This document shows positions 31,882 through 61,535 of a stretch of 64,000 nucleotides of DNA, piece after piece. The notes beneath the pieces are model-generated. The model made no database searches and was not told where the DNA came from. It saw only the letters and a list, made by a program, of their open reading frames with translations. The stretch covers positions 176,029 through 240,028 of the forward strand of contig RHPI01003079.1 in assembly GCA_009103225.1 (NCBI GenBank). Reading direction: 5' to 3'. The DNA is from Chlorokybus atmophyticus (lineage: Eukaryota; Plantae; Mesostigma and Chlorokybus algae). The first letter of the stretch is position 1. Each line of letters begins with the position of its first letter. Position numbers and translations under genes: made by a program.

Positions 31882-33000
31882 CTAACGTGCTTGCTGTCGC
31901 ACCGGCATGAAGGCTGATGCCAACTCTTGTACCGCCAAGCAGACAACCATCAGCCACACCATGCTGTTCTGGTCCATGGCTTGCCCTAGCAGCACTCGGC
32001 GTCGTTGTTCACTCAGTCCTGGCGCCGCCGTCGCATCGGACAAGAACCCCATCGCTCGCTCGCGCTCTTCAGCTGTTGGCTCTTCCAACCTGCTGTGTCG
32101 TGAGTCTCACACCAGCCCTGGCCCACCGTTACGGAATGCATAAGAGCCTGGGTAGGTCACCTGCGTCGGCAACGCTGCCATGTCATGCTCGACCTGGTTC
32201 ACCACCTCTTGAGGCGGCCGATCAGCCTTGCTGACCTGTTGTGCTGTGCGCCCATGCTCCAGCACCTGGTTGACTGTCAAACCTTGCGGTCTTTTATACT
32301 CTTGCTGCACCGTGCGAAGTAACTCGATAGGCGCGAGGTTTGTCCACTTCACACGCAGCCGATGCGCGCGCGAACCATGCCGTGCCGCATCCATGACCAG
32401 CTCATGGCCTAGAACATGTCTCACCAGCTGATAGTCCTCTTTCACGCGCTTGCGCTTATCGTCTTCAGCCGGCACATTCTCCAAAATGTACGCCATGGGC
32501 TGCTCTTGTCTTTGCTGAATCATGTTGATAACACGCACCAACTCCCAAAACAATGATGAGCGCGCATCCATCAATCCCTTCCGATGACCAGCCCGTGAAT
32601 GCCCTTGGCATTCCCACCCCGCTACCAGCAAATCAACCTTGCCGATTGCCGCGAGATGATGTGGCCCCACCAAGCAAATGTCTTGAAGCCATGCACTTTG
32701 GAAGCCCTTCACCGCACTCTCACATAGCAGGTCCGGGTACTTCGTCAACAACACCCTCACATGATGTTGAGCACCTTGCTGTGCCGTTGGCAAAGGGTCC
32801 ACATAGACGTAACGCCGCACCTTAATGCCGGCGTTCAACGCAGCCGCAAGCCTACTTGCAATGCCACCGAACAGCTCTACCATCACAACACCGTCCTCGA
32901 GGACCTTCCACTCAACGGTGTTGTAGTGATAGGCGGATGTACAGCTCGCACACCCTCGGGCAGCAACGGAGGCGCCAATGCCATCACATCTCGTGTCCAC
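31882..33000 (-). pseudogene. G2 C5 cytosine methyltransferase (one break near 32100)
   Basis: VELFGGIAS (motif I), VAGWECQGHS (IV), YILENV (VI), HGSRAHRLRVKWTNL, ERERAMGF, LLGQAMD (X). Confidence 0.92.
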
Positions 33001-40500: not shown

Positions 40501-41919
40501 GTCGGAGGTAGAGAGGGTTACCGCCCTATTTAGGGAGGCTGAGAGCGGAGCAGAGCAACTTGGCGAGCTGGTCGATGAGCAGCGGCAGCTGCTCAATGTC
40601 AGTCAAGAGTCAGCGCATTAGAGTCACGGGTGCGGTCATCTGATGCGGCCACAAGTGAGTTGCTGGCGAGGCATACGGCAGACATGCAGCGTGCGTCAGT
40701 GGCGAGAGAGCAAGCGCTGGTAGCTCTTTCCAGGGGGGTGGCCGCTGGTGGAAAAAGACTCCGCGTGCAGCGTGAAGACTTTGGTCAGTTGCTGTCAACA
40801 GCGCAGCAGGACCTTCGTGCATCAGTTACGGAGCTGGAGGCTAAGAGAAAACTGCTGCTGCAGTCACACGAGGCAACGCGTCAGCTGCAAGTGCATGCGC
40901 AAGGGTTGGAGGAGGAACTGGCGGAGGGCAAATGTGCTATGGCAGACCTGCAATTTTGCTGCAGTGATCTGGAGAGCAGGAAGTGTGCCTTGGAGGACGA
41001 GTTGGCCACTTGCACAAGGGCGAGGGAGGTCTCAATGCGACTGCTGGACGCCGAAGTGTCAGCCAACGCGCAGCTGACGCAGCAGTGCAACGATCTGGAT
41101 GAGCAGCACAGGTGGAAGGACTCTAAACTTTTGGAGTGGGGGCAGCGGTGCAGCTGCCTGGAATCTGATATCGAGGAGCTGAAAGAGTGCCTCGCACAAC
41201 AGGCGCATCATCTTGAGCAGCAGGCTGAAGCATTGCGCAAGCACACAACCAGCAGCAACTCGGCAGAGCAGCAAGCGCAACGGGGGCAGCACGAGGATCA
41301 CCTCAGAAGAGTGGCAGCCAGCGCAGGGTCTGGACCTGTGCACAAGGCGTTGGTGGCGATAGCCAAGCAGTTGATGTCTCCCGACTGTGTGGTCAACCTC
41401 AACGTGATCTGCGAACAGCATGGAGTCAGAGATGTGCGCCAATTGTACAATGTGTTGAAGGACTAGCATGCACATGTAGTTGAGACAAGCATAGACACAC
41501 AGAGACAGAGCTACCGCCACCAGAGCATACACAAGTCACATCACATTCATCTATTACAAGTTGTCCACTGGTTCTTATACCAGCCAGTTACACACACGTC
41601 TACGTTTGCAAGCACTGCGTAAGCTATACTCAGCCTTTTAACGCGCTCTAAGCTGCGTTGTCTTCCTTACAACCAGAGCTTTCCAACAAGCTCTTACACG
41701 TCTAGTATGAGTAAGTATACGTGGAGATACAAAGCAGTTAGTAAGGCTCCAGTCTGGAGTCCGGAGTCTGGTCCGACGACGCCATCTTGCTAAGTCCGGA
41801 CCTAGTGCTCGTCCTTACGACCTTCTACTCCGGTGTGGAGGGTCGATGCTGATTGTATTTAGGAATGACTCTCAACACTCCCACGCGAGCAGCTTGACCT
41901 CCAACGCTTGCTCCTGTAG

Positions 41920-44900
41920 TCAAACACAGATGCCAAGTCCTGCGCAACAAGTCTTGAACTTGAGCGGTGACAATGGCTTTGTCATGAAGTCCGCCAGCAT
42001 GCCCTCAGTGTTGCAGTACTGAAACTCCACCTCCTTCCCTGTGACTCTGTCACGCACAAAGTGATGCATGACATCAATGTGCTTCGTCCTTGCTGAGGCG
42101 ATAGGGTGCTTCAACAACTTGATGGCTCCTTGGTTGTCACAGTTGATGACGATGCACGCCATGGGGTGCTCTAAGTCTGCCATGAGCTTGCGAAGCCAGA
42201 GTGCCTCCTTCACTGCTGCTGCCGCTGCCATGTACTCAGCCTCTGATGTAGATGCTGCTGTTGTTGGCTGCAGCCTGCTGTTCCAGCTCACCACGCCTCC
42301 GTCAGCTTGAAGACGTAGCCTGTATTGGACCTCTTGCTGTTGAGGTCACCAGCAAAGTCCGAGTCGCAGTAGCCCTCCAACTCAGTGCTCCCGCTCCCAA
42401 ACTTGATGCCAACTGTTGCGCTCCCAGCAACATAGCGTAGTACTCCCTTTGCTGCGCTCCAGTGCTCCATGCTCGGTGCAGACATGTAGCGAGCAAGTAC
42501 TCCCACAGCATGTGCAACATTGGGACGTGTGCACACTGCCAGATAGAGCATGCTGCCTACCAGCTCACCATATGGATACTGAGCCTTGTCGAGTACCTCC
42601 TCATCCTTTGCCTTGATGAGGGCAGTGCCAAGTGCCAACGGTGTGGTCTTGGTCTTCGCTTCAGTGAGCCCGAACTTGGTGACGAGTCTGTTCACTTTCT
42701 GCTCCTGACTGATCTTGATTGTGCGTGCAGCCTTGTCGCGCTCAATCACCATGCCAAGGAACCACTTGGCCTCTCCAAGATCACGAACTGAGAATGCTTG
42801 ATGTAGAGCAAGTTTCGTCTCCTGCAGGTGGTGCACCTGCAGGGCGGTGATGATGATATCATCAACATATACGAGTAGCCAGACCTTGTTGTCTGCATAG
42901 ATGAAGAGCTCAGGGTCTGCAGAGGACGCGGTGAGGCCAAGTGCCTCCAGCTCCTTGGTGAGCTTGATGTGCCACATACGCGGTGCCTGTCGCAGCCCGT
43001 ACAGTGCCTTGATCAGCTTGCACGCTGTGCCTCTCTCCCCTTCTTCATATCCAGGTGGTTGCTCGATGAAGATCTCCTCCTCCAGCTCTCCGTAGAGGAA
43101 GGCAGTCTTCACATCCAGGTGATGCAGCTCTAAGTCTTCAGCAGCAACCATAGCTAGCAGTGCACGGAAGGTGGTATGCTTACTTGCAGGTGCAAACCCT
43201 TCGTTGGAGTCCACACCTTCCTGCTGCAAGAAGCCCTTTGCCACCAGTCTTGCCTTGTAGCGCTCAACGTTGCCCTGATCATCACGCTTCACCTTGAAGA
43301 CCCATTTCACTGGAATGGTCTTCATTCCTTACGGTAACTGCTCCAGTGACCAAGTGTTGTTGGCATGGAGTGACGCAATCTCCTCGTCCATAGCACGCTG
43401 CCATTACTCCGCATCTGGTGCTAACAATGCCTCCTCGTAGGTGCTTGGCTCCTCATTCTGCACACTGGCAACGAGTGCCTTGTGTAAGAAGTCAGGTGCC
43501 TTTCTCTCCCTCACTGGGTATCTCCGAGCTGCGTGCTTCTGCTGCAGGTGCGGCTCCTTCTGGCCTGCTACAACTGAATCTCGCTCACCCTTGTCATTGA
43601 TGACTGCCTCGCCCTCAGCCTCCACTGTCTTAGGATGCTCCTGTGGCTGTACTTCATCGTCATCTCAAGGAAAGAAGCCTGCTTCTGGTTGTGGTAATCC
43701 CTCGTGGAAAGCCACCTCTCTGCTCACAATGATCTTCTGAGTGTCCTCGAGCAAGATCCTGTAAGCCTTGAAACCCGGTTCATAGCCAACGAAGATGCCC
43801 TTTTTGTTGACCGGCTCCAGCTTGTGCCTGAGCTGTTTAGGCACTAGTGCATATGCCGTGCATCCAAGCACACGCATACCACTCACATCTGGTGTGGCTC
43901 CATAGAAGTGCTCCCACGGAGTCTTCTGCTCTGAGCTCACCGGAGACCTGTTGCGGATGTAGTTGGCAGTGAGTACCGCCTCCTTCCACAAACTGTCTTC
44001 CATTCTTGTGTCGTTGAGCATGGCTCGAACACGCTCTAAGAGTGTCCTGTTGAGGCGTTCTGCTGCTCCATTCTGCTGCGGGGTGTAGGGTGCCGTTGTC
44101 TCGTGGCGTATGCCCTTGCTGGCGAAGAACTCCTTCAACTCCTTGTTGATGTACTCCCCTCCTCGATCACTCCTCATTGCCTTCATCTTGTTGCCAAACT
44201 GGGTCTCCAACAAGGCCACAACTGTGCGCACAGCTCTAGCAACTTCTGACTTCAGTGTCAACGGAAAGATGACGGATAGCTTGCTGCAGTCGTCGAGGAA
44301 TGTAGCAAAGTACCTGACCCCTCCCTTCGCCACAATGCGCATAGGGCCACAGACATCCATGTGCACAAGCTCGCAAGGATGCTGACTGCTAGAAGTGTTG
44401 AAGGTATTACATGGGTGATGCTTGTATCCGGTCAGCTTGCCCTTCATACAGGAGTCGAGGGTCGAAGGTACCAGGAAGAAGCGCGTGGACTCCAGACTTA
44501 GCAAGACGGTCGAGTCATGACGGACTCCGGACCAGGCTGCTTGGTAGAGCCTTGGGAGAAATCGCGTAGCTTCGTGGATATGTAAGCTTAGCAAGCGTGG
44601 CTTAACTTGTTGGAAAGCTCTGGTTGTGAGCTAGACAGCGTAGCTTACAGAACAGCAATCGGCTGAGTATAGCGCACGCGGTGCTTGCCAATGTAGACGT
44701 GTGTAGAGACTGGCGGGGTATAAAGCCCAGATTTGTTGCAATGAAGATAAGAGGTCACGATGTAGCATGTGTGCGGATGCTATGGCAGCAGTAGCAGTCA
44801 TGCTCTTGTGTTGATGTTGTTGGCGTGTCACTTGCACGTGTGTATGTCAACAAGAAGAGGATGATGGGAATGGCATAGCATGCTGCTTTGCAACCAGGCA

Positions 44901-46273
44901 TGGTTCACAAAGTGCACCTAATGCATTCTTGAGTTCTTCTGTGCTGAGATGGATGCCCTTGACCATCTTCTCAGCGACAAGGCGAGTGAGGTTGACGTAG
45001 CTGAGATGCCCGAACCTTCGATGCCACAATGTTGGCGACTCCTTGTCCTTCATCACCATGGCTTGAATGTCAATGTCCTGAGGGTGCTGCTCCACGTGAT
45101 AGAGCCCTCCCGGATCAGCGATTCCAACCATGTGCACGACCCCATCAAGGATGACTGTGCAGCCACCCTTCCGAAATAGGATCTCCGCGCCTAAGCGCTC
45201 CGCAACCCTCACAGAGAATAGACTCGCAATAGCCTTAGGGACATGCATAACGTTGCGTAACAACACCTCGCGTAGTGTGTTACCAACCTTGCACTGGAGT
45301 CGTACGTTGCCAACTCCCTCGGCCACCAGTACTTCACCACCAAAGCCCGCCACCTTGATTGTGGACGTCAGCTTCCTGTAGCCCTCCATCACCTCTTGAT
45401 TTGGTGTGAGATCGCAGCCAGAGTCCACCACCCAGAAAGCTGTGCCCGCCTTCGAACTGGATGCAGTAAAGGCGACATGTTTCTCCTTGTGTTGGTGCTC
45501 GCTGCCGCTGTTGCTGGTGCTTGCTCTACGTTGCCCCTGTTGTTTCTTCCTACAGTCCTTGACAATGTGCCCCAACCACACCAGTGGCATGTGAGGTCTT
45601 TGTGACGAGGATTGCCTGGCTTGTTGCCCTTGTACTCCTCTTCATGGTTGCTCTTCTTTGCGTGCTTGCCTGCGTAGAAGGCGACGGCATCCGCTTGCTC
45701 GTCCTTCTTCACAACCCTCTGCTCTACGGTGAGCAGCTTCGGTAGCACATCGTCCAACGTCAACTCCGATGATGACGTCTGCAGCAAGGTTGCGACGACC
45801 TCGTGCTCTGCTGGTAGCCCTGCAACAATGGCCAACACTACCGCCGTCTCCCCCATGTTGTGGCCGACGTTGATGAGGTCCGCCCACAACGCTCTCGCGC
45901 GCGCAGCATACTTTGTGATGGGTTCTGCTGCCTCCTTCCTGAGTGCGCTCAGCTGCTTGCGTAGCTGCAATTTTCTGGCGTTGTTCTTGGCTTTGAAAAC
46001 GGCTGATAGCTTTTCCCAAGCTTGTCTACCATCTTCACATGCAGTGAGCATGGGAAAGTGATGCGGTTTGCTGTTCAACACAAGCAAAGAGTGTGCTTCC
46101 GCTGAATGCTCTGACCACACAGTGTTCGCTCCTGGTGTTGGTGGTGGTGCCTTCGGATCAACGTACTTCCGCACCTTCTTATGGATGAGCAAGGCCTTCA
46201 TCTCCACGCACCATGTGTTGTAGTTGTCGGTGTCCAGCTTTGCAATCTGCCCCTTGTCGTAGGTCGCCTCCAT
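41920..46273 (-). pseudogene. C2 gag-pol in fragments (gag, PR, IN, RT, RH)
   Basis: ORF pieces 46273-45389, 45590-44847, 44395-43665, 43625-43404, 43325-42288, 42294-41920, each closely matching the C1 protein. Confidence 0.95.
44396..44852 (+). mobile_element. Solo LTR (family L3) inserted in C2
   Basis: TGTTGAAGGTATTAC...TGTCAACA; AGAAG TSD. Confidence 0.95.
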
Positions 46274-48726
46274 CTCTGTCGTGCCTGCCTTTTCTTGCAG
46301 TTGACACCCAAGGCTCTGCTACTAACAAGCTACCGTAGTGTAGAACTACTAATGCACACAAGCTAGTCTCACACTCTTCAAGCGTAGTGTGGGCCCATAA
46401 CCCGTTGAAGGACTAGCATGCACATGTAGTTGAGGCAAGCATAGACACACAGAGACAGAGCTACCGCCACCAGAGCATACACAAGTCACATCACATTCAT
46501 CTATTACAAGTTGTCCGCTGGTTCTTATACCAGCCAGTTACACACACGTCTACGTTTGCAAGCACTGCGTAAGCTATACTCAGCCTTTTAACGCGCTCTA
46601 AGCTGCGTTGTCTTTCTTACAACCAGAGCATTCCAACAAGCTCTTACACGTCTAGTATGAGTAAGTATACGCGGAGATACAAAGCAGTTAGCAAGGCTCC
46701 AGTCTGGAGTCCGGAGTCTGGTCCAACGACGCCATCTTGCTAAGTCCGGACCTAGTGCTCGTCCTTACGACCTTCTACTCCTGTGTGGAGGGTCGATGCT
46801 GATCGTATGTAGGAATGACTCTCAACAGCGATCACGCAGAAAGCCAAGAGTGCAACCCGTGCATACACGAAACGTATGAGGGAAAAGGTTAGTAGTGAGA
46901 GTGCCTGCTGATGTGCAAGATATTCATAACGTAAGCGCTGTACGCAGATTCAGCTGCTCAAAGCTTTGGCAAAGCAAGGAGCCAACGAGTCCGCTTGCAC
47001 TGCGCAATACTCACCCATACCCTCTGCTCTGTTCACCGACGATGGGTTGATGAGAAAGGGCAACAAGTCGGCATTCTTGGCAGCACTTGTGCGTGCAGCT
47101 GAAGGTGCTGAGCGCCGCAGCTTCCCCCCTGGCGGCGAGTGCCTGATCTTGGAGGTGCATGTTCTTGATCAACAAGAACCCTCTCCCTCATGTCGGCACT
47201 ATACGTGAATATCTGGACCAGTTGCTCAAGACCTGCATCGTCCCTCGTCTACATAACCCGACACTACAGGCCCTGCATGTTGTCTTTGACGATCCTAAGC
47301 ATTCCACAGCAGTCAAGGCTGCATTGCAGGCGACCCGAGATGCAGGCTGTCAGAGGAGCAGCACAACTCTGGAACTCACCTCAGAAGTGCCAAAGGCATG
47401 GCGAAATCTGCTTGCTGATCGCAACCTGAAGCGGCGGCTATGCCACCTCTTTACTGCAGCCATCCCAGCGATGGCCGTCCCTCACATGCGTGAGGGACAA
47501 GAGGTCATCATTGCGGATGGTTCAGACACTGAGCCATGGGCGCATGCTGCGCGCAGAGTCCGCAGCGTGGATGGAAAGGCAGTCTACGACACTATGGACA
47601 CATACAGATGCAACCATGCCGAGGCCGACTCAAGAGTGTGGTACCATGCCAAGACGTGTGAGCAGAAGACACTCCTGATCTACTCACCCGACACGGATGT
47701 GTCGATCATAGGGCTGGCAGCTCTCGAGATGTGGGGCGAGGGTGACAAACAAGTGCATGTGCAGCTCAGCAGCAACGGGAGTGCCTCAACCAGAGCGCCC
47801 TTCATCAGCCTCAACGTGGTGTATCGTCACATGCAGAACATGGCACATGTACGTTACACAGCAAGAAACCAAGTGGCGCTGCAAGTCCTCATATTTTACG
47901 CGGTCACCGGGTGTGATTACACCAGCTACACAAGCGGCATTACCAAATTGTTCTACTGGCAACATGCCATGGGGAGGCAGCCAGAGTTCATATCGCCCGG
48001 TGGGCAACTCACTCGAGACAAAATGGTGCCCATGTTGCTGCGCTTGATTGGGTGCGCCTACTTTCACAAACACAAATCATCCTTCAGTCCCACCACATCT
48101 GCATCAGCTCTGTTCTACGACCTGAACGGTACGCGCGCATGCAAGGATGACACGCCAGCGCTGGAGGCATGGCTCGCCCTCATCAGGAGCAGTGCCTGGC
48201 CACACACGTGGGTCAACCTTGAGGACATGGCGTCTACTCAAGCGCTCACTTACCATTGCCAACGTAGCTTACGTTGGCAATGGTACGCCTGTGGGTTGTC
48301 GACATGTGGCTTCAGTGTTGCAGATCAGAAATGCAGCTGCCCAACCTTGCAGACAACGGTTTTGACGTGGTAGACGGCGTTGCTCACGCCATCATGGACA
48401 CCGCTGAGAACATGGCCGCTGCCAAGAGTCGCACCAACCAGCTGCTGCACGGATGCAGCTGCAAGAAGAATCAGTGCACCACCAAGATATGCAAATGCCG
48501 CAAGGAAGGCCAGCGCTGTTGCAGCAGGTGCTCATGCATAGGATGCACCAATTCAGCGGGCGGTCAGCCCACTCAAACACAACATCATGGTGCAGCACAG
48601 ACGGGCGCAGATGCACACAACAATCAGGCAGACGACCCTAGGTATGACTTACCAGCCAGCTCTGAATCTGACGACAGCGATGACGATGCCGACTGTAGTA
48701 ACTCGGAGGATGATCTGACGGATGCA

Positions 48727-49176
48727 TGTTGAAGGTATTACATGGGTGATGCTTGTATCCGGTCAGCTTGCCCTTCATACAGGAGTCGAGGGTCGAAGGT
48801 ACCAGGAAGAAGCGCGTGGACTTCAGACTTAGCAAGACGGTCGAGTCATGACGGAGCAGGCTGCTTGGTAGATCCTTGGGAGAAATCGCGTAGCTTCGTG
48901 GATACGTAAGCTTAGCAGGCGTGGCTTAGCTTGTTGGAAAGCTCTGGTTGTGAGCTAGACAGCGTGGCTTACAGAACAGCAATCGGCTGAGTATAGCGCA
49001 CGCGGTGCTTGCCAATGTAGACGTGTGTAGAGACTGGAGGGGTATAAAGCCCAGACTTGTTGCAATGAAGATGAGAGGTCACGATGTAGCATGTGTGCGG
49101 ATGCTATGGCGGCAGTAGTAGTCATGCTCTTGTGTTAATGTTGTTGGCGTGTCGCTTGCACGTGTGTATGTCAACA
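48727..49176 (+). mobile_element. Solo LTR (family L3) inserted in the acidic tail of A1 gene 1
   Basis: Near-identical to 44396-44852; ATGCA TSD; the reading frame resumes in frame when it is removed. Confidence 0.95.
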
Positions 49177-49284
49177 ATGCATGCTCTGACAAGGAAGGCG
49201 ATGAGGCCAACATTGTGGACGACAACAATATGGCTGATTGGTTGGACATAATCGAAGACTTGACTGTTCCTGAGGAGTAAAGCC

Positions 49285-51353
49285 ATGAACAGCCCATGCC
49301 ACGACTGCATGCGTCACCTGCTGGCATTCAAGCACTGGCGCCCTCTTACTCCAGTCCGCCGCCGCCTTCGCCGCCGCCGCCCCTACCGCCGCCTGCAGCT
49401 GACATCTCGGACTATCAGAATGCACAAGTCCGGGAAGTGTAGTGTCAACCCGCGCATTATTAGGGTTGCGCTCGTAAAGTTAGGGCGGCGATAGGCCGCT
49501 GGTGCTCTTCTCTGTGTGTGCTCGGCTGGCATTATTTACTGCATGCAATGGCAGGTGGTGCACAGCCACGGCGCGCATCGGTCTGCGAAGTATGCAGGTC
49601 TTTCGTGGTGAACAACGGCCAGCGTGCACGTCTGGAGCAACATCAGAGGCAATGCAGCCAGTATGAGGTGATGTTCAGCTTCATCGCCTCATGCTGGCAT
49701 CACCATTGTCAGGGGATGCATGTGCTTGAGTGCCGTGGCAAGCACAAGTGCACCTTGCCCAAGTTCTTCCAGCCTCAGTGCTTTTGCCCTGCATGCGCAC
49801 GCTCTCCATTTGAGTGGCATGGGCTGCCCATGCGGTACATGCCGTATGCCTACCCGGGCACCATTGCAAATGGCCAAGCTTTCACGCTACTCAACGTAAG
49901 TGCAGCGCGTGCCATGCTGCATGATTGCACAGTCAAGGTTGGAGCTGTTGCATGAATGCACAGCCCTACACTCTCTCACGTGCGGCGTCGCAGAGGCAGC
50001 TTGCGCGTTGCGGACGCGGCCGAGTTGACGGCACAGATGCGTTTGCGCTGGAGACAGACACCCAGCACACACTCACAGTGGAGGTCAGTGTGCGTGCTTG
50101 CAACCTGCTGTGCTGTGTACTGCTCAGCGTGTATTGCATAGCACACACTCACAGCGCGCACTGAGAGCATGGTTGCCCTAGCAGAGCGTGCGCGTCAACT
50201 GCGTGCAAGACGCGTACAGACGGCGTTGCAGCACAGGTGGGTCTGCACTAGTGGGCTGCGACGTCCAAGTGTACTGGCCTGCCGACAAGGCTTGGTATCC
50301 AGGACACATATACAAGTACAATACTACACAAGGTGATTCAAAACACCACACTATTTACCCTATGACCAGCCCGGGTGGAGGGTCTAACTTGTGCATGCTC
50401 ACGCACACAGGACGTCACAGCGTGCGCTTCGTAGATGGCGATACCCAGCATCTCCAGATCGACAAGCACAACGTTGTCGTCTGCCTCAGCTCACAAGGAC
50501 ATCACTATTGCATTCGTGTCGGCGGTTGCAGAGTCCCTACCACCCGGAAGGCCATACCTCCTTTGCCTTGTCTCCCACATTGGTCAGGAGCCCCCCCTAT
50601 GCTCTTGACACACACGCCGCAACTCCCCAACGGGGCGCCGCATCGCCCCAAGTTGCTGGACTTGTTCTGCGGAGGGGGAGGCGCCAGCATGGGCTTGTAC
50701 CGCGCCGGCTTTGACGTCACTGGTGTGGATATACATGCCCAGCCAGAATACCCCTTCCACTTAATCCATGCCGAGCGCTGACAGTCGACCTGGTTGAGTA
50801 CGATGTGATCTGGGCAAGTCCCCCCTGCAAAGCCTTTGCGCGCTGCATACCCGACACACAACGGCGCAAGCACTCTGACAAATGGCAGCACAGCACGGTG
50901 CTACATGACATCAGACAGAAGTTACACGAGTCCGGCAAGCATTACATCTTGGAGAACATCCCCGACGCGTCCATACACATGCGTGCCGACATGGTCCTGT
51001 GCGGCACTATGTTCTCGCTCTCTACATTTCAACACAGAGTGTTCGAGTCCAGCCCGCCTTTGTCTGTTGACAAGGTTTGTGACCATGCATTACACAGTCT
51101 GGATGCGTTGTCTTGACACCGCACTGCACACACCAACGCGCAGCAGCCCCTACAGCACCAGATGTATCCGATCTATGGGCAAGCGGCTTCACGCGGGACT
51201 GTAGCAGGGTGGCAGAAAGCGATGGGCATCGATTGGATCCATGCAGAGTCTACTCTGGTAGAGTGCATACCCCCGGCCTACTCTGAGTACATAGGCCGCC
51301 AGATGTTGAAGGCGCTAGGGTACACTCTGCACGATTCATCTCTGTCGTGGTGA
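49285..51353 (+). pseudogene. A1 gene 2: Pro-rich leader, Cys/His domain, Tudor domain, C5 DNA methyltransferase; start approximate
   Basis: Tudor VQVYWPADKAWYPGHIYKY|RHSVRFVDGD (intron 50333-50410); DNMT LLDLFCGGGG, IWASPPCK, YILENIP, LCGTMF, FQHRVFE, AMGIDW, ECIPPAYSEYIG; 1-bp frameshift near 50774 and TGA at 51114-51116. Confidence 0.9.
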
Positions 51354-52919: not shown

Positions 52920-55900
52920 ATGGCGGATGATGCTAGTCTAGCGTCGCTTTTTGAGGAGCAACGACAGAAGCTCGAGTTGATAGAGGCGGCGAGGAAGGGT
53001 CGCAATACAAGCCAGCGTGACTATGCCAGGCGTCGCCGTGAGGAAGATAAGAATTACATTCAGCAGCTGAAGGAAGAGTGTGGGCTGGTAAAGTCTTGGA
53101 TGCACGCAACTGGCGTGTTTCTGCATGCATTGACATGTGGGAAGACTTGGAGATGGCAAGGAGATAACCTTGTTTTGGTTCAGGTGCGTGTGGAGGGTGC
53201 TTCGTGTGTTCATGCGTGTGTATTGTGTGTATCGTGCATTGTCTCCACCTGTGACTGCGGTTTGATATGGCAGCTGATATGGACGAGAAGTGTTATGTGC
53301 TCGACATACTGACTTTGATGTATTGTGTGAGCAGGATACCTTGCCGACGCTTGGTGGTGCACCTCTTGGACTATGTGCGCAGGTGAGGTGCGGTTGCATG
53401 CTGCATGCTGCGTAGCACTGTAGTTGGCTGCAAACCCGTGCTCAATGGTGCATGTTGCAGGAGAATGATGTTGAATTGGCTCTGTCGTCGTCCGATGAGG
53501 AGGAAGATCAGGAGAACATCCATCAAGTACTTTCGCAGCGTAAGAAGCAGAAGCAGCATCATACGCCTCATCAGCAGCAAGTGCCACCAGCCTCTGCACT
53601 GCACCAGACACCGCATGGCAATGTGCGCCATGATTTGAATGGCAACCGTGTCGTGTTGGGACCGGCCATGTCTCGGTTGAACACAGCGAGAGGCGTACCT
53701 AAAACGCCCAAGACACCACTTGGCACCTTGCCAGGTGGGCGCTTAGCTTAGCCTGATTTGCTTTGCTAGGCGGTACCCTGAAAGACTATGAATCATGTGT
53801 AGTAGATGAGACGATGTTGTATACCTATTGCCTAAATGTGGATTTGAGAACTAGTTTCCACAGCTTGATGCATGTGTGTTGTGTGCCGACCAGGTTCGTC
53901 GTGCCAGCGTGCATGCGGATGATGCGTACAGGCAGACCCGTGTGTTCAGCCAGCTGGAGGTATAATGGGAGTGGGGGGCACGCAAACAAGTAAACATGCT
54001 GTGTAGTTGATCCTTCAATGCACAGTCATCTTGTCAGCAGCTTGTGCTAGGTTCGATGTATTGGCGTTCGATGTAGAAAATGGGGATGTGGTCTGTAAAT
54101 TTGCCAGGTATCCATACTCAAGTCACCATGTGGAATGGCAGAGTGGTATGAACGGGTGTCATTATAGTCTACATCACTATGTATGTAAGCACTTTTTCAA
54201 CGAGTCGGCAGATTGCGAAATAGGGGACTACAGCCATATGATAATATATGCTCTGAGCGCCCAACCACTGTGTCTATGCAGTCAGCGACTTTACAAGTTC
54301 AGAGTTTGAGGGCAGAGATGGCTTCAGTCAAGCAGGGGAGAGATCGTGTACAACGCGACTTGGATGCGGCGCTGGAGAGGCTGCGTGTCATGGAATCAAG
54401 CGGCAGCTCCAACACCAACAATGCCTTGCAGAATGCCTTGCTGGAGGTTCTGCAGTTGCGCACACAATGCGAGGTTGGTGTTGCCTAATCCTGTTTGTAT
54501 GATGTATGTGGTGTATGTTTGGGTTTGACTTACCTCTGGCTTGCATGGTGTAGAACTTGCGAGATCAGCTCACACGGAATGTATGTCAAGATGACCAACG
54601 TCGCGCAGAGTCTGCACGGGCTGTTGGGGAACTGGAAGAGGAGTTGGATGCAATGACCCTGCATGCCGAGGTGAGTGGGTGCACAACCTTGCATGCAATA
54701 TTATATTGACTATCAGAGGCCTCTATGTCCAGAAGTCGAACATATCACCAGGTGTTAGAGACCAGGGTGGGCGAGGAAGCGGACGCTTATAACGCTGAGA
54801 GGAGACACTGGCTGCAGGTGGAGTGCAATCTGTCAGGATACCGTGGCAAGTTAGTGGAGCTGGAGGACGTGATCGCTAGTCTACGTGAGACTGTGCGCAC
54901 AAACAGGGCGTGCCATCCATCGCAGCACGATGCACGTGTGGCGGACGAGGTGCGCCAGCTCTATGAGGACGATGTGCAGCGAGCAGCCAATGAGGACTGT
55001 CACGAATCTTTGGCATGCGCGGTGAGAGATGTTGCCTCCCAGTTGCTGCCGAGGGGTGCCGTTGTATTCCTGACTGCAGTAGCAGTCAAGTACAATATTA
55101 CACCTGCGCGTGTACTGCTGCGTGCTGTGAACCAGCGCTTACCGGGAGCGGGTGTGGTAGTGACCGGCGCCAGGCAACAGGGTACACTAATGATTGCTGC
55201 TTGGGCCGATCCTTTGGCATGCCTGTTGCGCCATGGGATGAGGGTTACTGAGGTGCCTGCCAGCACACAGCCAACTCGTACGGGTACCAGCGCGGTTGAT
55301 GGCGACCAACTGCCTGCTGCTGTACTTCGTCACCTGAACAGGGTTATGGAGGCGGAGAGGCAACGGCATGTCGAGCGCAACAGACAGGAGCCTGATCTGC
55401 GCTGCGTGAATTGGCAAGAGGAGTGGGAGAAATAATGAAATGAAATGAAATGAAATGCGGACCTGTAGTGCGACAGTTGTTTGGCACACTGACTGGCTAC
55501 AGTCAGATGGAGCGATTGCCATCTCCTGGTCCCGAACGGGCTCGTGCTTTAACAATCCTGCGCAATAAGACCGTGTTCCTGATGCACTGTGCATTGTATG
55601 CAAGGAGCAAGTTTGCATACTCTCTATTGCATCTGGCGGTCACGGACGAGGTGGACACACATTCTGAAGGGAACAAGTTAATCAGGACCCTCAACCGCCT
55701 GGGTGTGACAGTAAGCCGAAGCCACATCGATCGACACATACACACCAGGGCGCTTCACAATATGAACAGCATCGCTCGATTGCAGCCCCGACGTGGTATA
55801 CATGTGCTGGCATCGATTGATAATCTAAACATAAAGGCAGGCCACCAGGCACGCTACAAAGGCAGGAAAGCAGGAGACATCCATGCCACTTCAACTCAGC

Positions 55901-58900
55901 TTACCTCGACAGCCGCTCGGATGCCTCCAGAACAGCTGACTCTCGCAGGTGAGTTGTCAGCCCATGGTGATCAGGGAGACCAATTACTGCGAGTACAGGT
56001 CAGTCAAACCCGCATCTTGTGGGCAATCCATGTACTCATTGTTGGTGTTGTTGCAGCCATCGAGGAATCGCATGCTGGCAGAGTCACTGGTGGCTGAGCC
56101 GTGCGTCTACAATATGCCTCCTCCTGCGCCCATGCAGAGAGCACCAATTGTTGTGCGGAGTGACCCAATCTTGAATTTAATGCCTGAAGAGGTTGCGGCA
56201 CTGGAGAGTTCCAGAAATTGTTACACAATGCCGTGTTGATGCGCATGCAAGAGCCGGACCAAACAAGTTTGCCAACACTCAAGGAGGATTGGGCACGGTG
56301 GCTGCAACTGGCCACAGGCAGAAGCACTGAAGTTGCCAACGACATTGAATACCTGCTTGTGTTGCCTTTCTGCCCTGACAATATAGAGAACCTCAAGTTT
56401 GCGCTCTTGCAACTGCGCGCCAAGGTTGGCATCACGGATTCAACAAGCAAGATCTATGTTACTAGGAACCTGAAGACGTTTGCCCTGATGCAAGCACTAA
56501 AAAAGGCAGAGCCGGGCTACTGGGACTGGGTGGTGCCTTTCCCTGGCGATTTCCATGTCCTGATGAACATGCAGCCCGTTATTATGAAGATGGCCTGGGA
56601 CGCTGGTCTCGATGCTATGTCCTTGGAAGCCGGTTTTTCTGCAGCCATGGCACGCAATCATTTAGCAGACGGCTCTCATTGGAAGAAGATACACAATTTT
56701 CTGTGTAAAGTCTTGGAGGCACTGTACAGACATATGTTCAAGTTGTGGCAGCAGGCAGAAACCGCAGAAATCAAGAACTTGTGCAGAGCTGACCTGGAGG
56801 AGAACGGGATCAATGCCCCAAAGTCTGCTTCCTTCTTCCGCGAATGGTGCGAGGGTCAGTGCAAGACCGATCGTACCTGGCAGTTCTGGTGGAACTTCGT
56901 GAGCCGTGATATGCTGCATTACTTTCGGCTATTTTGTGGTGTTTCCCAGAAGATCTGGCATCTCCGACTGGCCAGCTGGAAGGGTCTGAGCCCGCTTCCA
57001 TTCGCCTGGGATCGCTACCATTATTAGAAAGTCATGACGCTGCATCTTGCAGACCTGCAGAGCATGCCGCGCTCTTTGCTGGATATGCTAGCCGAAGGTG
57101 GCTTTGCAGTCAGTCTAACAGGATCGGCTGGCAGACTGGTTGCTCTCGATGAAGCCCATGAGTGCCAGGTCAACAGAGATATGAAGATGTCACTGTGCAG
57201 GCCCACCACCGAGCAGCTCTGTCAGAAGTCATTGTACTTGGGGGAGCGCAGTCAAGCACACAAGCAACTAAAGCGTCAGCTACTGCTTGACAACAACCTG
57301 GTCAGCAACGAGCTGGATGATGACGCCGACGATGACCACGAGAGGGTAATGCGGACATTGGCTACCGACGCCGCCAGGTGTGGCAGCGATCTAACGCATC
57401 TTGTTGAGCTGCTGGAGGATACACAAGCCTTGGCAAGGCCACACGCGCTGCTCTTGACGCATCTTACCACCGGGATACCAGCGGCGGCTGCTGCTTCAGC
57501 AGATCTTGCGCAACACTACCAGGTTGGTGTTGAGGCCATGAAGTCGTTTGTGGAGGTTGACGTCTGCCGCGAGGCACCTGCGTGCAAAGTCAGTCGCAGA
57601 TTCAACTTGAAAACAATGGCACCTGCTAAGAAGCGCATGAGCAAACAGGCCACCGTGATCAAGCAGTACCGTCAAGAGATGTTGGTGGCCAAGCGCCTGG
57701 CTGCCAATGGTGCTAGTCAGGAGACCGTCACAGCAAGATACTGCGAGCATCCACGGGCGCTGTTTGAGGAGCTCACCGGCAAGATGCGGTCTAGCGACAA
57801 GGCCAAGTTGATGGCGCAGGTAGCTCCTCTCGACAACACATGCTGGAGCCGCATGTCCCCGCAGGGCGTGGAGTGCATCATCCTGGAAGGCATGTTCCTG
57901 ATTAATCAAGAATGCCACATGCTGCAAGGCACCATCAAGGACTATATCCAACACCTGATGCGCACCTGCGTGCTCAGCCGGCTCGCCAATCAGACCGTGC
58001 GCAGCGTGCAAGTTGTGTTTGACACTCCACGACTCCAAACGGGGGTCAAGTCTTCACTGCAATGCGCACGTGACGGTGCGGCGCAATCCTCTGGTGGTCG
58101 TCTAACTCTGGACACTTAGCTGCCGAGATTGTGGCGGGATGTGCTAAGAGATCGTAGCTTGAAGCGATCGCTGTGTGAACTGATAACAGAGCACATGCCC
58201 AACATGATTGCGGAGTACCTGCACCCCGACCAAGAGGTTGTATTCGCTGGCGGTTCAGATATAGACGAAGTTGGAGACCTTGCGCGTGTCGTGGCACGCG
58301 ATTCGGACAGCCCTGCACGCGTATATTTTGTAAACGACTATGTTTGTAACCATGGAGAAGCTGACTCTCGCGTCTGGGTGCATGCGCACAAATGCCCCTA
58401 CAACAACATCCTCATATACTCACCTGACCGATGTGACCATGATTGGCCTGGCGATCCCCGACGGGTGGGATGCAGTGTTGAAGGACGTCACAGTACAGGT
58501 GGCACATCACTCCAGTGGCTCCACTCGACCACCCTTCCTGCACTTGTCTACACTGGAACAACAAGTCAACAGCATGCACCAGGTGCAGAGCATCGCCACC
58601 GGGTTGCGTGGCTGGTGGCTTCTTCTGGTGTATGCAGAAACTGGTTGCGACTACACCTCATTCATTGGCGGCATCTCGAAACAGTTCATCTGGCGCAAGG
58701 TCCTGGCACAGCATGCAACATTCATCACCGGCAATGTTAGTGTAGTGGAACATGAGATGTGTTTCGCTATACTGCGCCTCATTGGGTGCTCTTACTTCGA
58801 GAAGTACAGGTCCAGCTTCCACAGCGGCACTCTTGCATCTCTGTACTTCGAGTTGCACGGGCCTGAATCAACCACCAGCGATAAGGGACGATTGGCAGAC

Positions 58901-59446
58901 TGGTTAGAGGCGATCCACAAAACAGTGTGGAAGAAGATTGCCACGCCACGAGATACCATGCCCACAGTCGATGCACTATGGCTGCATGCACTTCGCTCGG
59001 TGTATGCAGTGCAGATGTGGATGCAGAGCTGCAATGGTGACATGCACATGCCTGACTTGTCTGATTATGGTTTCACTGAGGTCGATGGGTTATGGACTGC
59101 TGTCAAAAATCTGCCAGAAAACATGGTGGAGGCGAAAGCTAGGAGGCAATTGCTGATGAAGGGTTGTGGATGCAAGACTAAACAATGTATCAGCAAGAGA
59201 TGCAAGTGTCGCAAGGCAGGACAAGCATGCACCGACAGCTGTTCGTGTTTGGGATGTGACAACCACGGCAATCACGTGGACGAGGACGCTAGTGCAGCTC
59301 CTAGTTGCCACACAACACCCCCCCCGCCCGTGGTCAACCCAACAGCCAAACAGTCAACACAGGCAATGGACAACGATTATCCAGATTCTGTCAACTCAGA
59401 CAGTGATGAGGAAGACCTCACCATGATGGATATGGACGACGTCTAG
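52920..59446 (+). pseudogene. A2 gene 1: coiled coil + putative Academ DDE transposase + XPG/FEN1-like nuclease + Cys8 finger
   Basis: ASIDNLNI, VTRNLKT (probably VTGDLKT), PFPGDFHVLMN, LDEAHECQVNRDMK; VQVVFDTP, CNHGEADSRVWVHA, SPD(T)DV, TGCDYTSFIGGISK; CGCKTKQCISKRCKCRKAGQACTDSCSCLGCDN; stops at 57025-57027 and 58117-58119, 2-bp deletion near 58428. Confidence 0.87.
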
Positions 59447-59546: not shown

Positions 59547-61535
59547 ATGTACTGCACCTGTCAACGCCGCCGCCACCGGCAGCATCCTCTTCCGCAACCT
59601 CCTCCGCAACCGCCGCCGCCTCCGCCGGATGCCCAAACCGCAGACACACAACCACATCAACATAAGGTGCCGGCACCGCCGCCGCCACCGGCAGCTTGCT
59701 CCCCCGCCTCTGCCTACACCGCCGCCCCCGCCAGCCTCGAGAAGAAATCTGTGCTGGCTGGTATGTAGCAAGCGCATTTTTTTAGGGTTTGCAACGCGTG
59801 TTTCTAGGGTAGTGCAGCTCAGCAACATGTGTGTTACATTGCAAGGCGGCGGAGTTGGCGGAGTGCGGTGGCACCAACACGGAGACGGCGGGCACGGTCA
59901 AGAAGGTCATGGTTTGTGACGTGTGCCATTCCTACGTCGTCAACAACGGTCAGCGTTCGCGCCTTCAGAAACATCAGGCTCAGTGCAAGGCGTACCAGGA
60001 GCGCTTTGAATACACTGCCGCATGCTGGCATCACCACGCTGCAGGTCATCACATCCTGCACTGCCGAGTGAAGCTTAGGTGTGCGCAACCAGTGTTTTTT
60101 AATATGCAATGCGCATGCCATCAGTGCGAAAGCTCTCTGTTTGAATGGCACGGCCTACCCATGCGATACATGCCTTACGTCCGCCCCACCACCATGATCG
60201 AAGGGATGCAATGCCGCCTGCTGGCGGTGAGTGGCACAGATGGCACTGATAATACTGCACGCATTTGTGCCAACACTAATACTGTATATACAACTTGTGC
60301 GCCAGGGCCAGCGCGCGTGCGCTGCGGACGCGGTGACGCGGTGACCGTTGTCATGCTGCCAGAGATAACGGCTGTTGCATCAGAATTCCTCGAGGTTGGT
60401 GTTTCAACGTGAACGTGCATCACACCTAGTGCATTACACAACAGCATTGTAATTGTGGACAACCAGACTGAACGAGAAGGAACCGATGCCGCCAGCGTGC
60501 TGCGCAAGCGTTGCGCGCGCGGGGATGATGCATTGGAGGGCCTCGATGTACTGGTGTACTGGCCGATGGACGAGACTTGGTATACCGGAGTCGTCTACAT
60601 TTACAACCCACGCAATGGTGAGTTATCACGGTCAAGAGCATTCACACGTGACACCGGCCATGGACTCAACGTAGCGCACTGCAATTGCAGGGCGCCACAG
60701 TGTGCGCTTTGTCGACGGCGACAAGCAGCATATGAAAATCGACAAGCACAACATGGTGGTTGTGTTCTGGCACCAAGGAGCTCAGTGTTGCCACCGCGTT
60801 GGTGGTCAGCGCGTACCCACTCACCGCAAGATCCCTCCGCCTCTGCCGTGTCTCCCGCTGTGGTCGTCATCAGCGCCATTGCTCAACGTTACCGGCGTTG
60901 ACATCAATCCACAGCCCGAGTACCCGTTCCCCTTCATACAAGCTGATGCCCTGGTAGTCGACCTGGCGCCATACGACCTGATTTGGGCTAGCCCCCCTTG
61001 CCAGGCATATGCCCGATGCATACCAGATTCACAACGTCACCAGCATTCCACACGGTGGAAGCACAGCACACTGCTGCCATCGCTGCGATTGCGCCTTCAT
61101 GAGTCAGGGAAGAACTACATCCTGGAGAACATACCAGATGCTGCATGTCACATGCAGCACAACATGGTGCTGTGCGGCACCATGTTTGGACTGCCAACCT
61201 TCCGGCACAGGCTTTTTGAGACACATCCCAAGATGGTAGCCGACCTGGTGTGCGACCATACGTCCAAGAGTCTAGGTCCACTGTCGGGTCATGTGTCCAG
61301 CACTGCCAGCCGCACACTGAACAGCACTACCCAGCAGATGTACCCCGTGTATGGCTCCGCTGCATCGCGCGGTACCATATCCGGCTGGCAGCAAGCATTA
61401 GGCATTGACTGGATTGATGCTGATGCCACACTCGTCGAATGCATTCCGCCTGCATACTCTGAGTATATTGGGCGGTGCATGTTGCAGGCAATGGGATACA
61501 CATTGAACAGCGGCCCCATATCATGGGGCCGCTGA
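59547..61535 (+). CDS. A2 gene 2: Cys/His domain, Tudor domain, C5 DNMT lacking motif I; start approximate
   Basis: Tudor VLVYWPMDETWYTGVVYIY|RHSVRFVDGD (intron 60618-60690); IWASPPCQ, YILENIP, FRHRLFE, ALGIDW, ECIPPAYSEYIG; open frame from the Tudor 3' exon to the stop. Confidence 0.88.

What the first reader, a model, noticed from the sequence alone, without database searches (positions are those of the whole stretch)
50650..51353. The Academ DNMT looks bacterial/phage-derived and independent of the Gypsy DNMTs
The compact domain (about 230 aa; LLDLFCGGGGASMG...VTGVDI..QPEYPF...IWASPPC...ENIP...LCGTMF..HRxFE...AMGIDW...ECIPPAYSEYIG) resembles, from my knowledge of the family, small Dcm-like methylases of actinobacteria and their phages, not DNMT1/3/CMT or the GWECQ enzymes 20 kb away. 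That would mean two independent DNMT captures by two TE classes in one genome, one probably by horizontal transfer.
Basis: inference. Interest (0 to 1): 0.8.

Follow-up and report, generated by a model that had tools for sequence, protein, structure and literature searches.

The report
Virus-type DNA methylase carried by transposon
A broken copy of a small cytosine DNA methyltransferase gene rides in a DNA transposon of a green-lineage genome. Its family is common in phages, its closest known relatives sit on giant-virus-like contigs, and it is unrelated to the Dnmt3-like methylases carried by the Gypsy retrotransposons nearby.

Summary
The domain is not one open frame, though. One base is missing after 50774, and 51114-51116 is an in-frame TGA. 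A second, diverged copy (ORF 60702-61535) is open but lacks exactly 36 codons that include the SAM-binding motif I.

The domain belongs to a very large family of about 200-aa C5 methyltransferases:
- 2969 cluster representatives
- at least 483 IMG/VR viral contigs
- 323 isolated phages
- at least 506 bacterial species from many phyla

The window copies sit in an 11-member clade (support 97-99) whose three members with long contigs lie on giant-virus-like contigs. The clade shares indels, and several members carry an MBD insert.

Profiles separate this domain cleanly from the Gypsy DNMTs, so the two captures are independent. A phage-type origin is supported. "Actinobacteria and their phages" is too narrow, and the route (giant virus or direct) and the family's root stay open.

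The host element fits AcademX: a FEN/XPG-fold nuclease, a CXC finger, and a DUF6589 region upstream. Its ends were not defined. dN/dS of about 0.1 between the two copies argues for long-term function, but both local copies are defective. This scan had already noted the same stretch in an overlapping window.

The parts
50650..50774 (+). Copy 1 MTase, N-terminal piece (frame 1): motif I (FCGGGG) through VTGVDI and QPEYPF
   Evidence: The phage-type profile scores the whole copy at 247 bits.
50774..50781 (+). Break 1: one base missing after 50774, so frame 1 runs into the stop at 50779-50781 and the protein continues in frame 3
   Evidence: Reading. A contig in run X1 has an extra T behind 50774, which keeps the frame. 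Copy 2 reads ADALVVDL here.
50778..51113 (+). Copy 1 MTase, middle piece (frame 3): motif IV SPPC (catalytic Cys), motif VI ENIP, LCGTMF, motif VIII QHRVFE
   Evidence: phmmer against PDB hits DNMT2 at E 0.013 over motifs IV-VI.
51114..51116 (+). Break 2: in-frame TGA at a codon that is Gly in copy 2 and GGA in a related contig
51117..51353 (+). Copy 1 MTase, C-terminal piece: QMYPIYG, AMGIDW, IPPAYSEYIG, GYTL tail, stop at 51351-51353
   Evidence: The tail and the QMYPVYG motif are shared with the giant-virus-linked clade.
50188..50604 (+). Reader-like region upstream, in the same reading frame as the MTase: two halves (50218-50332 and 50411-50604) split by a GT..AG phase-1 intron at 50333-50410
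   Evidence: The halves are conserved in copy 2 at 52% and 68% aa identity, and the intron is not conserved. Splice sites were read. The first halves match Tudor_KDM3B at E 0.002-0.0085, below the Pfam cut-off.
49569..49901 (+). Cys/His-rich region conserved between the two units (55% aa identity); no family found
48727..49177 (+). LTR-like insertion of about 450 bp that splits unit 1 between the CXC finger and the cargo gene; 95% identical to 44396-44853
   Evidence: It is high-copy in public runs, at depth 70-320 against 2-4 for the flanks.
47159..48373 (+). Nuclease ORF of unit 1, with the FEN/XPG/XRN 5'-nuclease fold
   Evidence: 28 multi-copy homologues lie on large eukaryotic contigs. 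The AF2 model has pLDDT 74. Foldseek hits Rat1/XRN2, XRN1 and flap endonucleases.
48274..48732 (+). Cys-rich CXC finger downstream of the nuclease
   Evidence: Pfam TCR/CXC at E 7e-5. The unit 2 counterpart scores E 5e-6.
41454..46827 (-). Copia retrotransposon inserted upstream of unit 1, with 424-bp LTRs that are 97.6% identical
55450..59446 (+). Unit 2 transposase-side genes: DUF6589 region (56218-57027), nuclease homologue (57778-58849), CXC finger (58988-59263)
   Evidence: The same gene order is seen in other genomes.
59900..61535 (+). Unit 2 cargo gene: Cys/His region, reader-like halves with an intron at 60618-60690, and an MTase ORF (60702-61535) that is open but lacks 36 codons including motif I
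32107..33000 (-). Gypsy DNMT used for comparison: motif I ELFGGI, AGWECQ loop, ENVP; Dnmt3-like family
   Evidence: PF00145 at E 3e-12. Its relatives include Closterium proteins.
27347..28143 (+). Second, degenerate Gypsy DNMT, 47% identical to the first, with in-frame stops

Best explanation
Window 50650-51353 is a decayed copy of the last domain of a cargo gene carried by an AcademX-like DNA transposon. The element encodes a DUF6589-type transposase region, a FEN/XPG-fold nuclease and a CXC finger. Next comes a spliced gene made of a Cys/His region, a Tudor-like reader and a roughly 230-aa C5 cytosine methyltransferase.

The methyltransferase belongs to the minimal phage/prophage 'orphan' C5-MTase family, which has motifs I, IV, VI, VIII and X with almost no target-recognition domain. 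Within that family it belongs to a small clade whose other members with known context lie on giant-virus-like contigs. It therefore entered the transposon lineage by horizontal transfer, separately from the Dnmt3-like DNMTs of the Gypsy elements in the same window.

Inferred mechanism: in intact copies the reader domain brings the enzyme to chromatin, and the enzyme methylates cytosines in a short motif, on the element's own DNA or nearby. This would tune how the host's methylation-based silencing sees the element.

Shown: the family, the clade, independence from the Gypsy DNMTs, linkage to the transposon genes in two diverged units, purifying selection, and the lesions.
Inferred: the donor, the DNA substrate, the target motif, and any benefit to the element.
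For: - Family: copy 2 finds 1141 and 2969 relatives. Most are 190-240 aa, many hit PF00145, and the best prokaryote-type matches reach 40-44% identity.
- Phage and prophage spread: a tailed-phage context for P0005, 323 isolated phages, at least 483 IMG/VR contigs and at least 506 bacterial species.
- Fold: the nearest relative P0001 models as a C5-MTase. The family profile hits the solved C5-MTases 3g7u, DNMT2, HaeIII and HhaI.
- Clade: the window copies group with 5 MBD-insert proteins and 4 long proteins at SH-aLRT 97 (154 rows), 99/97 (67 rows) and 98 (ingroup only). Shared indels and motifs are visible.
- Giant-virus contexts: L006 has Rpb1 with an intein and PolB on a 245-kb contig. L005 has Topo II, RNR, an aquaporin and a U-box protein. 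L172 is a Tara marine contig with densely packed genes.
- Independence from the Gypsy DNMTs.
- Cargo status: the order nuclease, CXC, Cys/His, reader, MTase is colinear in two units that share only 38-73% aa identity. An intron lies at the same place and phase in both.
- Selection: dN is 0.25-0.27 with dS saturated.
- Nuclease fold.
- Same transposon gene order elsewhere, without the MTase.
Against: - Both window copies are defective. Copy 1 has a frameshift, a nonsense codon, an LTR-like insertion upstream, and lacks the transposase part. Copy 2 lacks motif I.
- No intact copy was seen as a whole, and the related contig that lacks break 1 shows another 1-nt gap at 50868 at low depth.
- No RNA run holds the stretch, so expression and splicing are unshown.
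- Transposon termini and target-site duplications were not found, and the DDE core was not demonstrated.
- The backbone of the family tree is unresolved. An AU test did not reject a tree with the outgroup next to the nine virus-type rows (p 0.40), so the root, and hence the direction of transfer, is open.
- Only three of the nine clade relatives have enough context to be called virus-like.
- The Tudor assignment rests on sub-threshold hits.
Confidence: 0.72

Rival explanations
1. Direct transfer from a bacterium or tailed phage into the alga or its transposon. Under this reading the giant-virus genes are a parallel or later offshoot.
For: - The family is overwhelmingly phage- and prophage-borne.
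- The N-terminus of copy 1 is nearly identical to that of metagenomic phage-type proteins such as P0003.
- The root is unresolved.
Against: - No prokaryote-type sequence exceeds 44% identity, whereas virus-clade members reach 45-49%.
- Clade support is 97-99 in three trees.
- Several insertions and motifs are shared only with the virus-linked clade.
- Actinophage enzymes are among the more distant members, at about 35% identity.
Confidence: 0.15
2. The clade is an old eukaryotic or transposon-borne 'orphan' DNMT lineage, and giant viruses took it from their hosts. The direction would then be host or transposon to virus.
For: - The window copies are sister to the MBD-insert group, not nested inside it.
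- MBD is a eukaryotic domain, which suggests the viral genes recombined with host genes.
- Several clade members sit on short contigs of unknown origin.
Against: - All three members with long context are virus-like.
- No other eukaryotic genome copy, and no Tudor-MTase fusion, appeared among 1.84 billion representatives. However, intron-containing genes are poorly called in that library.
Confidence: 0.15
3. The MTase module is only a dead relic. It was captured once, is not used by the element, and may never have methylated DNA in this host (or it acts on RNA).
For: - Both local copies are defective.
- No RNA evidence was found.
- A relative of the element in another genome lacks the module.
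- Some C5-MTase folds, such as DNMT2, act on tRNA.
Against: - dN/dS is about 0.1 over 807 nt between two lineages with saturated dS.
- The catalytic motifs are kept in both copies.
- Each copy's lesions are private to it, and break 1 and break 2 of copy 1 are absent from related contigs.
- The intron and the fusion architecture are conserved.
Confidence: 0.12
4. The MTase gene is a host gene, or a piece of an endogenised giant virus, that merely lies next to transposon genes. It would not be cargo.
For: Element ends were not defined. The nearest relatives are viral.
Against: - The same gene order occurs twice in the window in units that have diverged to 38-73% aa identity.
- No other viral genes lie around it. 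The neighbours are Copia and Gypsy elements and transposon genes.
- The gene has spliceosomal introns.
Confidence: 0.05

Closest known systems
Small 'DNA methyltransferase' genes of tailed phages and prophages (for example Mycobacterium phage Timshel gp56, Gordonia phage Malisha gp85, Rhodococcus phage Trina gp021; PHROG 363)
   Same: Same family: the same motif order and length class (about 200-230 aa) and a minimal variable region. The family profile scores the window copies at 223-247 bits.
   Different: - Identity is only about 35% (up to 44% for metagenomic members).
- The window copies carry the clade-specific insertions and the GYTL tail.
- The window copies are fused to eukaryotic-type reader domains with introns, and they sit in a eukaryotic transposon.
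C5-MTases on giant-virus-like (Nucleocytoviricota-like) metagenomic contigs: P0001, P0121, P0124 and P0169 (with an MBD insert) and P0136, P0148, P0207 and P0238
   Same: These are the nearest relatives, at 45-49% identity. They form one clade with the window copies at 97-99 support. They share the 'IP..QR..H..W.H..LIP' stretch, the two-residue insertion after ENV.GA, QMYPVYG and, in the MBD group, the GYT(V/L) tail.
   Different: The viral genes are stand-alone and intronless. Most carry an MBD-like or other long insert where a target-recognition domain would sit. The window copies have only a short linker there and have N-terminal reader domains instead.
Retrotransposon-borne DNMTs: KnitGypsy-Dnmt3 of Klebsormidium nitens, and SymbioLINE-Dnmt and SymbioDIRS-Dnmt3 of Symbiodinium (de Mendoza et al. 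2018, PMC5890265)
   Same: A mobile element carries its own C5-MTase. The Gypsy DNMTs in this window match that description, with the DNMT inside Pol and Dnmt3-like.
   Different: Those are retrotransposons with DNMTs related to eukaryotic Dnmt3 or to orphan lineages. Here the carrier is a cut-and-paste DNA transposon and the enzyme is of the phage/giant-virus mini family.
Mariner-1_OLpv, a Mariner transposon in Organic Lake phycodnavirus that encodes a C5-MTase and an EcoRII-like endonuclease (Bao and Jurka 2013, PMC3627910)
   Same: A DNA transposon with a C5-MTase cargo and a link to giant viruses.
   Different: That element lives in a viral genome, belongs to another superfamily, and pairs the MTase with a restriction-type nuclease. 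No such pairing is seen here. I could not compare the sequences.
'Orphan' eukaryotic DNMTs acquired through viruses (Mol Biol Evol 2025, PMC12344493)
   Same: The same general idea: lineage-specific DNMTs in eukaryotic genomes with viral or bacterial affinities.
   Different: That survey screened with PF00145 at E < 1e-4. The two window copies do not reach that threshold, so this lineage would probably have been missed. No DNA-transposon carrier was described in the passages I read.

Membership tests
C5 cytosine methyltransferase superfamily (Pfam PF00145 fold) | Motif I, the SAM-binding FxGxG loop | tested here: met
   Copy 1 has LFCGGGG at about 50659-50679. Copy 2 lacks it through a 36-codon deletion.
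C5 cytosine methyltransferase superfamily (Pfam PF00145 fold) | Motif IV Pro-Cys with the catalytic cysteine, motif VI ENV, motif VIII RxR | tested here: met
   SPPC, ENIP and (Q/R)HR(V/L)FE are present in both copies, and these columns are invariant in the family alignments.
C5 cytosine methyltransferase superfamily (Pfam PF00145 fold) | Significant match to the curated family model | tested here: not met
   Neither copy nor its pieces hit PF00145 at E 0.1 or below. Many relatives do. The family profile hits solved C5-MTases at E 2e-6 to 1e-2. The model of relative P0001 matches DNMT1, MET1, 3g7u, HaeIII and HhaI at probability 1.0.
C5 cytosine methyltransferase superfamily (Pfam PF00145 fold) | Cytosine-5 methylation of DNA | not testable with these tools
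   This needs expression of an intact natural copy and a methylation read-out.
Phage/prophage mini C5-MTase family (about 200 aa) | Full-length similarity and clustering with the family, to the exclusion of other C5-MTases | tested here: met
   E 1e-37 at 40-44% identity over the whole domain. Profile scores are 223-247 bits against 10 bits for the Gypsy DNMT. The family is monophyletic at 100/98 against the Dnmt3-like outgroup.
Giant-virus-linked clade of that family | Clade membership with support, plus shared indels | tested here: met
   Support is 97, 99/97 and 98 in three trees, with the indels shown. The MBD insert typical of the sister group is absent from the window copies.
Eukaryotic DNMT classes (Dnmt3-like tested; DNMT1, CMT, DNMT2, DNMT5 and DNMT6 not available) | Affinity to a eukaryotic DNMT class | tested here: not met
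   The Dnmt3-like profile gives about 2 bits for the window copies and 70 bits for the Gypsy DNMT. Matches to PDB DNMT1 and DNMT2 are confined to motif I or motifs I-VI, at E 1e-4 or weaker. The other classes were not in the tree.
Gypsy-borne DNMT family of this genome | Sequence affinity to the GWECQ enzymes | tested here: not met
   BLASTP gives E 0.011 over 63 residues only. The Gypsy-family profile gives 4.4 and -0.2 bits. The two hit lists do not overlap. The two types lie on opposite sides of the tree.
AcademX DNA transposons | Encodes an XPG-type nuclease next to the transposase | tested here: met
   The model of ORF 47159-48370 matches the Rat1/XRN2, XRN1 and FEN fold family. The nuclease as a trait of AcademX is stated in PMC10045372, citing Kojima 2020. 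Pfam XPG models are not hit.
AcademX DNA transposons | Academ-type DDE transposase | tested here: inconclusive
   Unit 2 has a DUF6589 region (E 1.6e-6), and the same region sits directly upstream of the nuclease homologue in other genomes. I could not show that DUF6589 is the Academ DDE core. Unit 1 lacks this part.
AcademX DNA transposons | Terminal inverted repeats and 3-4 bp target-site duplications | tested here: inconclusive
   No ends were defined. A 25-nt inverted repeat (38003-38027 and 63659-63683) and a GGWCC-rich palindromic block (37612-37883) were seen. The window may end before the right terminus.
Restriction-modification system | Cognate restriction endonuclease next to the MTase | not tested
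   Nothing resembling one turned up in the Pfam scans of neighbouring ORFs, but no dedicated search was made.

The most novel reading that the evidence does not exclude
Intact members of this Academ-like family may be active 'epigenetic' DNA transposons. They would use a giant-virus-derived mini C5-MTase, aimed by a Tudor-like histone reader, to write 5mC on their own or neighbouring DNA. One algal genome would then hold two unrelated classes of self-methylating mobile elements: Gypsy with a Dnmt3-like enzyme and Academ with a virus-type MTase. The sister viral enzymes, with an MBD inserted in place of a target-recognition domain, would be read-write enzymes that copy methylation.
Probability: 0.25. 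Interest if true: 0.8.

Novelty: new variant of a known kind. Interest (0 to 1): 0.6.

Why it matters
Mobile elements that carry their own DNA methyltransferase are rare. The known eukaryotic nuclear cases are retrotransposons. This would be a cut-and-paste DNA transposon doing the same with an unrelated enzyme of phage/giant-virus type, fused to chromatin-reader domains, in a genome that also holds Gypsy-Dnmt3 elements.

It points to gene traffic among phages, giant viruses and eukaryotic transposons. It also shows that PF00145-based censuses of eukaryotic DNMTs miss this lineage. And it offers a compact natural reader-writer fusion whose target motif could be measured directly.

Tried and rejected
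- **Introns at the breaks:** rejected. Break 1 is a 1-nt shift with the protein readable across it. Break 2 is a single TGA where copy 2 and a related contig have Gly.
- **Pfam and NCBIfam on the three pieces:** only generic SAM-MTase hits on motif I.
- **Single-protein scan of GTDB genomes:** nothing found. The alignment-based scan worked.
- **PDB profile search for the nuclease ORF:** nothing by sequence, so its fold was predicted instead.
- **PADLOC:** no hit for the window copy, and only generic type II or DrmMII MTase hits for relatives.
- **PHROGs:** phrog_363 is also hit by the Gypsy DNMT, so it does not discriminate.
- **Sequencing runs:** only Logan contigs with coded organisms and no RNA holder. 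Expression, splicing and the species name could not be obtained.
- **AU test meant to test placement:** it mostly measured where the distant outgroup attaches (p 0.40). It says the root is uncertain, not that the clade is wrong.
- **GGWCC as target motif:** only mildly over-represented in the window (117 against 92 ± 9). It is clustered in three blocks that are not shown to be the ends of this element. Left open.
- **Kojima 2020 (PMC7165386):** not held in the library.
- Exons and pieces were searched separately by reference. Copy 1 was read through only inside scripts, with X at its two breaks, for alignment, profile scoring and trees.
Full report
**What is at the coordinates.**
It is not one open frame.
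- The N-terminal part, with motif I (LFCGGGG), VTGVDI and QPEYPF, is in frame 1 and runs into a stop at 50779-50781.
- The sequence continues in frame 3 with LTVDL..IWASPPC..ENIP..LCGTMF..QHRVFE.
- That frame holds a TGA at 51114-51116.
- It then continues to QMYPIYG..AMGIDW..IPPAYSEYIG and a stop at 51351-51353.

The first break is a single-base shift, because the protein can be read straight across it. The second is a point nonsense codon. Contigs of a public run carry a roughly 96% identical copy or variant with an extra T behind 50774 and G for T at 51114. Both lesions are therefore private to this copy. That contig also shows a 1-nt gap at 50868, at a depth of only 4.

**A second copy.**
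A self-comparison found a second unit 10 kb downstream. ORF 60702-61535 is open through the whole domain and is 65-73% identical in protein. It lacks exactly 36 codons, including motif I.

Over 807 aligned nucleotides, dN is 0.25-0.27 and dS is saturated (LWL85 gives 2.9). This gives dN/dS of about 0.1. The module was under purifying selection for most of the time since the two lineages split, even though both local copies are now defective.

**Which family.**
Neither copy reaches Pfam PF00145. Copy 2 nevertheless finds 1141 proteins in the word-indexed search and 2969 cluster representatives in the exhaustive HMMER search, 1706 of them at E 1e-10 or below. Almost all are 190-240 aa and many hit PF00145.

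The family sits in the following places:
- a tailed-phage contig, for P0005, with portal, Mu F, S78 protease, PolA and RecA genes
- 323 isolated phage genomes, at about 35% identity: 189 Mycobacterium, 52 Streptomyces, 28 Paenibacillus, 22 Arthrobacter and 19 Gordonia phages
- at least 483 IMG/VR viral contigs
- at least 506 bacterial species, from Actinomycetota, Acidobacteriota, Alphaproteobacteria, Verrucomicrobiota, Patescibacteria and Chloroflexota, plus one Methanobacterium MAG

A profile of the family hits solved C5-MTases only weakly: 3g7u at E 2e-6, then DNMT2, HaeIII and HhaI. An AlphaFold model of the nearest relative (pLDDT 84) matches C5-MTase catalytic domains in general.

**Nearest relatives.**
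The best hits are not the phage-type proteins. They are a handful of longer ones, P0001, P0121, P0124, P0002 and P0169, at 40-49% identity. A second group comprises P0136, P0148, P0207 and P0238.

These proteins share the following features with the window copies:
- an extra stretch between motifs IV and VI (IP..QR..H..W.H..LIP)
- a two-residue insertion after ENV.GA
- the QMYPVYG motif
- for the first group, the GYT(L/V) tail

Three trees put the window copies with these nine proteins:

| Tree | Rows | Support for the 11-row clade |
|---|---|---|
| Quick | 154 | SH-aLRT 97 |
| Careful, Dnmt3-like outgroup | 67 | 99/97 |
| Quick, ingroup only | 59 | SH-aLRT 98 |

In the careful tree the window copies are sister to the first group at 99/88.

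Where enough context exists, these relatives lie on giant-virus-like contigs:
- P0136 is on a 245-kb contig beside Rpb1 with an intein and a family B DNA polymerase.
- P0121 is on a densely packed 29-kb contig with topoisomerase II, the small subunit of ribonucleotide reductase, an aquaporin and a U-box protein.
- P0238/P0275 is on Tara Oceans contigs with densely packed eukaryote-like genes.

The first group carries an MBD-like insert at the place of a target-recognition domain (Pfam MBD at E 2e-6; PDB MBD hits). The window copies have only a short linker there.

The backbone of the phage-type part is a polytomy. An AU test did not reject a tree in which the distant outgroup attaches next to the nine virus-type rows (p 0.40). 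The root of the family, and so the direction of transfer, remains open.

**Independence from the Gypsy DNMTs.**
The Gypsy enzyme at 32107-33000 (-) has motif I ELFGGI, an AGWECQ loop and ENVP, and it hits PF00145 at E 3e-12. A degenerate second one lies at 27347-28143. Its relatives are a separate set of 52 proteins, including Closterium proteins and one labelled DNMT3A. None of them appears in the other hit list.

Cross-profile scores:

| Profile | Academ-type copies | Gypsy DNMT |
|---|---|---|
| Phage-type family | 247 and 223 bits | 10 bits |
| Gypsy-DNMT family | 4.4 and -0.2 bits | 397 bits |
| Dnmt3-like group | about 2 bits | 70 bits |

The joint tree separates the two families at 100/98. 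This agrees with the published KnitGypsy-Dnmt3 of Klebsormidium nitens (PMC5890265). I had no DNMT1, CMT, DNMT2, DNMT5 or DNMT6 sequences to include.

**The carrier element.**
The two units are colinear from the nuclease gene to the end of the MTase (47044-51350 against 57778-61526). Protein identity between them is 38-73%.

- ORF 47159-48373 has 28 multi-copy homologues on large eukaryotic contigs. Its model has the FEN/XPG/XRN 5'-nuclease fold.
- It is followed by a CXC cysteine finger.
- Unit 2 has, upstream, a DUF6589 region. The same region precedes the nuclease homologue in other genomes.
- One such relative (L175) has no MTase module. The cargo is therefore an addition in this lineage.

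This fits AcademX as described in PMC10045372. The DDE core, the termini and the target-site duplications were not shown.

Unit 1 is badly damaged:
- A Copia element (41454-46827) lies upstream.
- An LTR-like insertion (48727-49177) splits it.
- The transposase part is missing.

Upstream of the MTase, in the same gene, are a conserved Cys/His region and a two-part reader-like domain. Its first half weakly matches a Tudor model, below the cut-off.

**Mechanism and novelty.**
The likeliest reading is a reader-writer cargo. The reader domain would bring a minimal, motif-specific C5-MTase to chromatin, so that the element marks its own or nearby DNA. This echoes what was proposed for retrotransposon DNMTs (PMC5890265). 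That part is inference.

Related precedents exist:
- A Mariner transposon in a giant virus carries a C5-MTase (PMC3627910).
- 'Orphan' DNMTs acquired through viruses have been described (PMC12344493).

I therefore rate this a new variant of a known kind. The new elements are the carrier (a nuclear Academ-like DNA transposon), the enzyme lineage (phage-type, giant-virus-linked, invisible to PF00145 screens) and the fusion to reader domains.

**Limits.**
- No RNA data were found.
- The organism name is coded.
- The element's ends are undefined.
- Copy 1 was read through only in scripts, with X at its breaks.

Noticed in passing
P0001 (L001:2028-3050), P0121 (L005:10001-10843), P0124, P0169/P0268 (L174:5065-6078): Mini C5-MTases on giant-virus-like contigs have a methyl-CpG-binding-domain-like insert exactly where a target-recognition domain would sit (Pfam MBD at E 2e-6; PDB MBD2/5/6 hits; two strands and a helix in the model). 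This would be a possible read-and-write enzyme. I found no description of it in the papers searched.
   Followed up: partly
L002:33-1436 and 1549-2583: The MTase relative P0002 lies next to a gene with weak 2OG-Fe(II) oxygenase hits, on a short contig whose first half is 72% GC. This may pair a methylase with a possible oxidase. The contig's origin is unknown.
   Followed up: no
window 44396-44853 and 48727-49177: Two 95% identical repeats of about 455 bp are distantly related (inverted) to the Copia LTRs. One lies inside the Copia element and one inside unit 1. They are high-copy in public runs (depth 70-320). They are probably solo LTRs of another family.
   Followed up: partly
window 38003-38040 and 63629-63683: A 25-nt inverted repeat is 96% complementary across 25.6 kb, with a further 11-nt complementary block beside it. 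It brackets both units and could be part of the ends of a larger composite element, or two copies of a small repeat.
   Followed up: partly
window 426-713, 5617-5910, 37612-37883: Three dense clusters of GGACC/GGTCC sit within palindrome-rich sequence. The whole-window count is 117 against 92 ± 9 expected. Their relation to the MTase-bearing element is not established.
   Followed up: partly
window 27347-28143 (+): A second Gypsy DNMT is 47% identical to the one at 32107-33000 and is interrupted by several in-frame stops.
   Followed up: partly
P0122, P0123, P0131, P0134: Some prokaryote-type members are tandem fusions of two complete mini-MTase domains in one protein of 377-453 aa.
   Followed up: no
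window 49338-49504 and 38419-38462: GCC/GGC triplet-repeat tracts. The one at about 49356-49393 attracts very high contig depth (about 2970) in run X2, which reflects simple-repeat cross-matching rather than the element's copy number.
   Followed up: no
L172:7130-7936: On the Tara giant-virus-like contig, a neighbouring gene three genes away from the MTase P0275 has a faint MBD hit on record.
   Followed up: no
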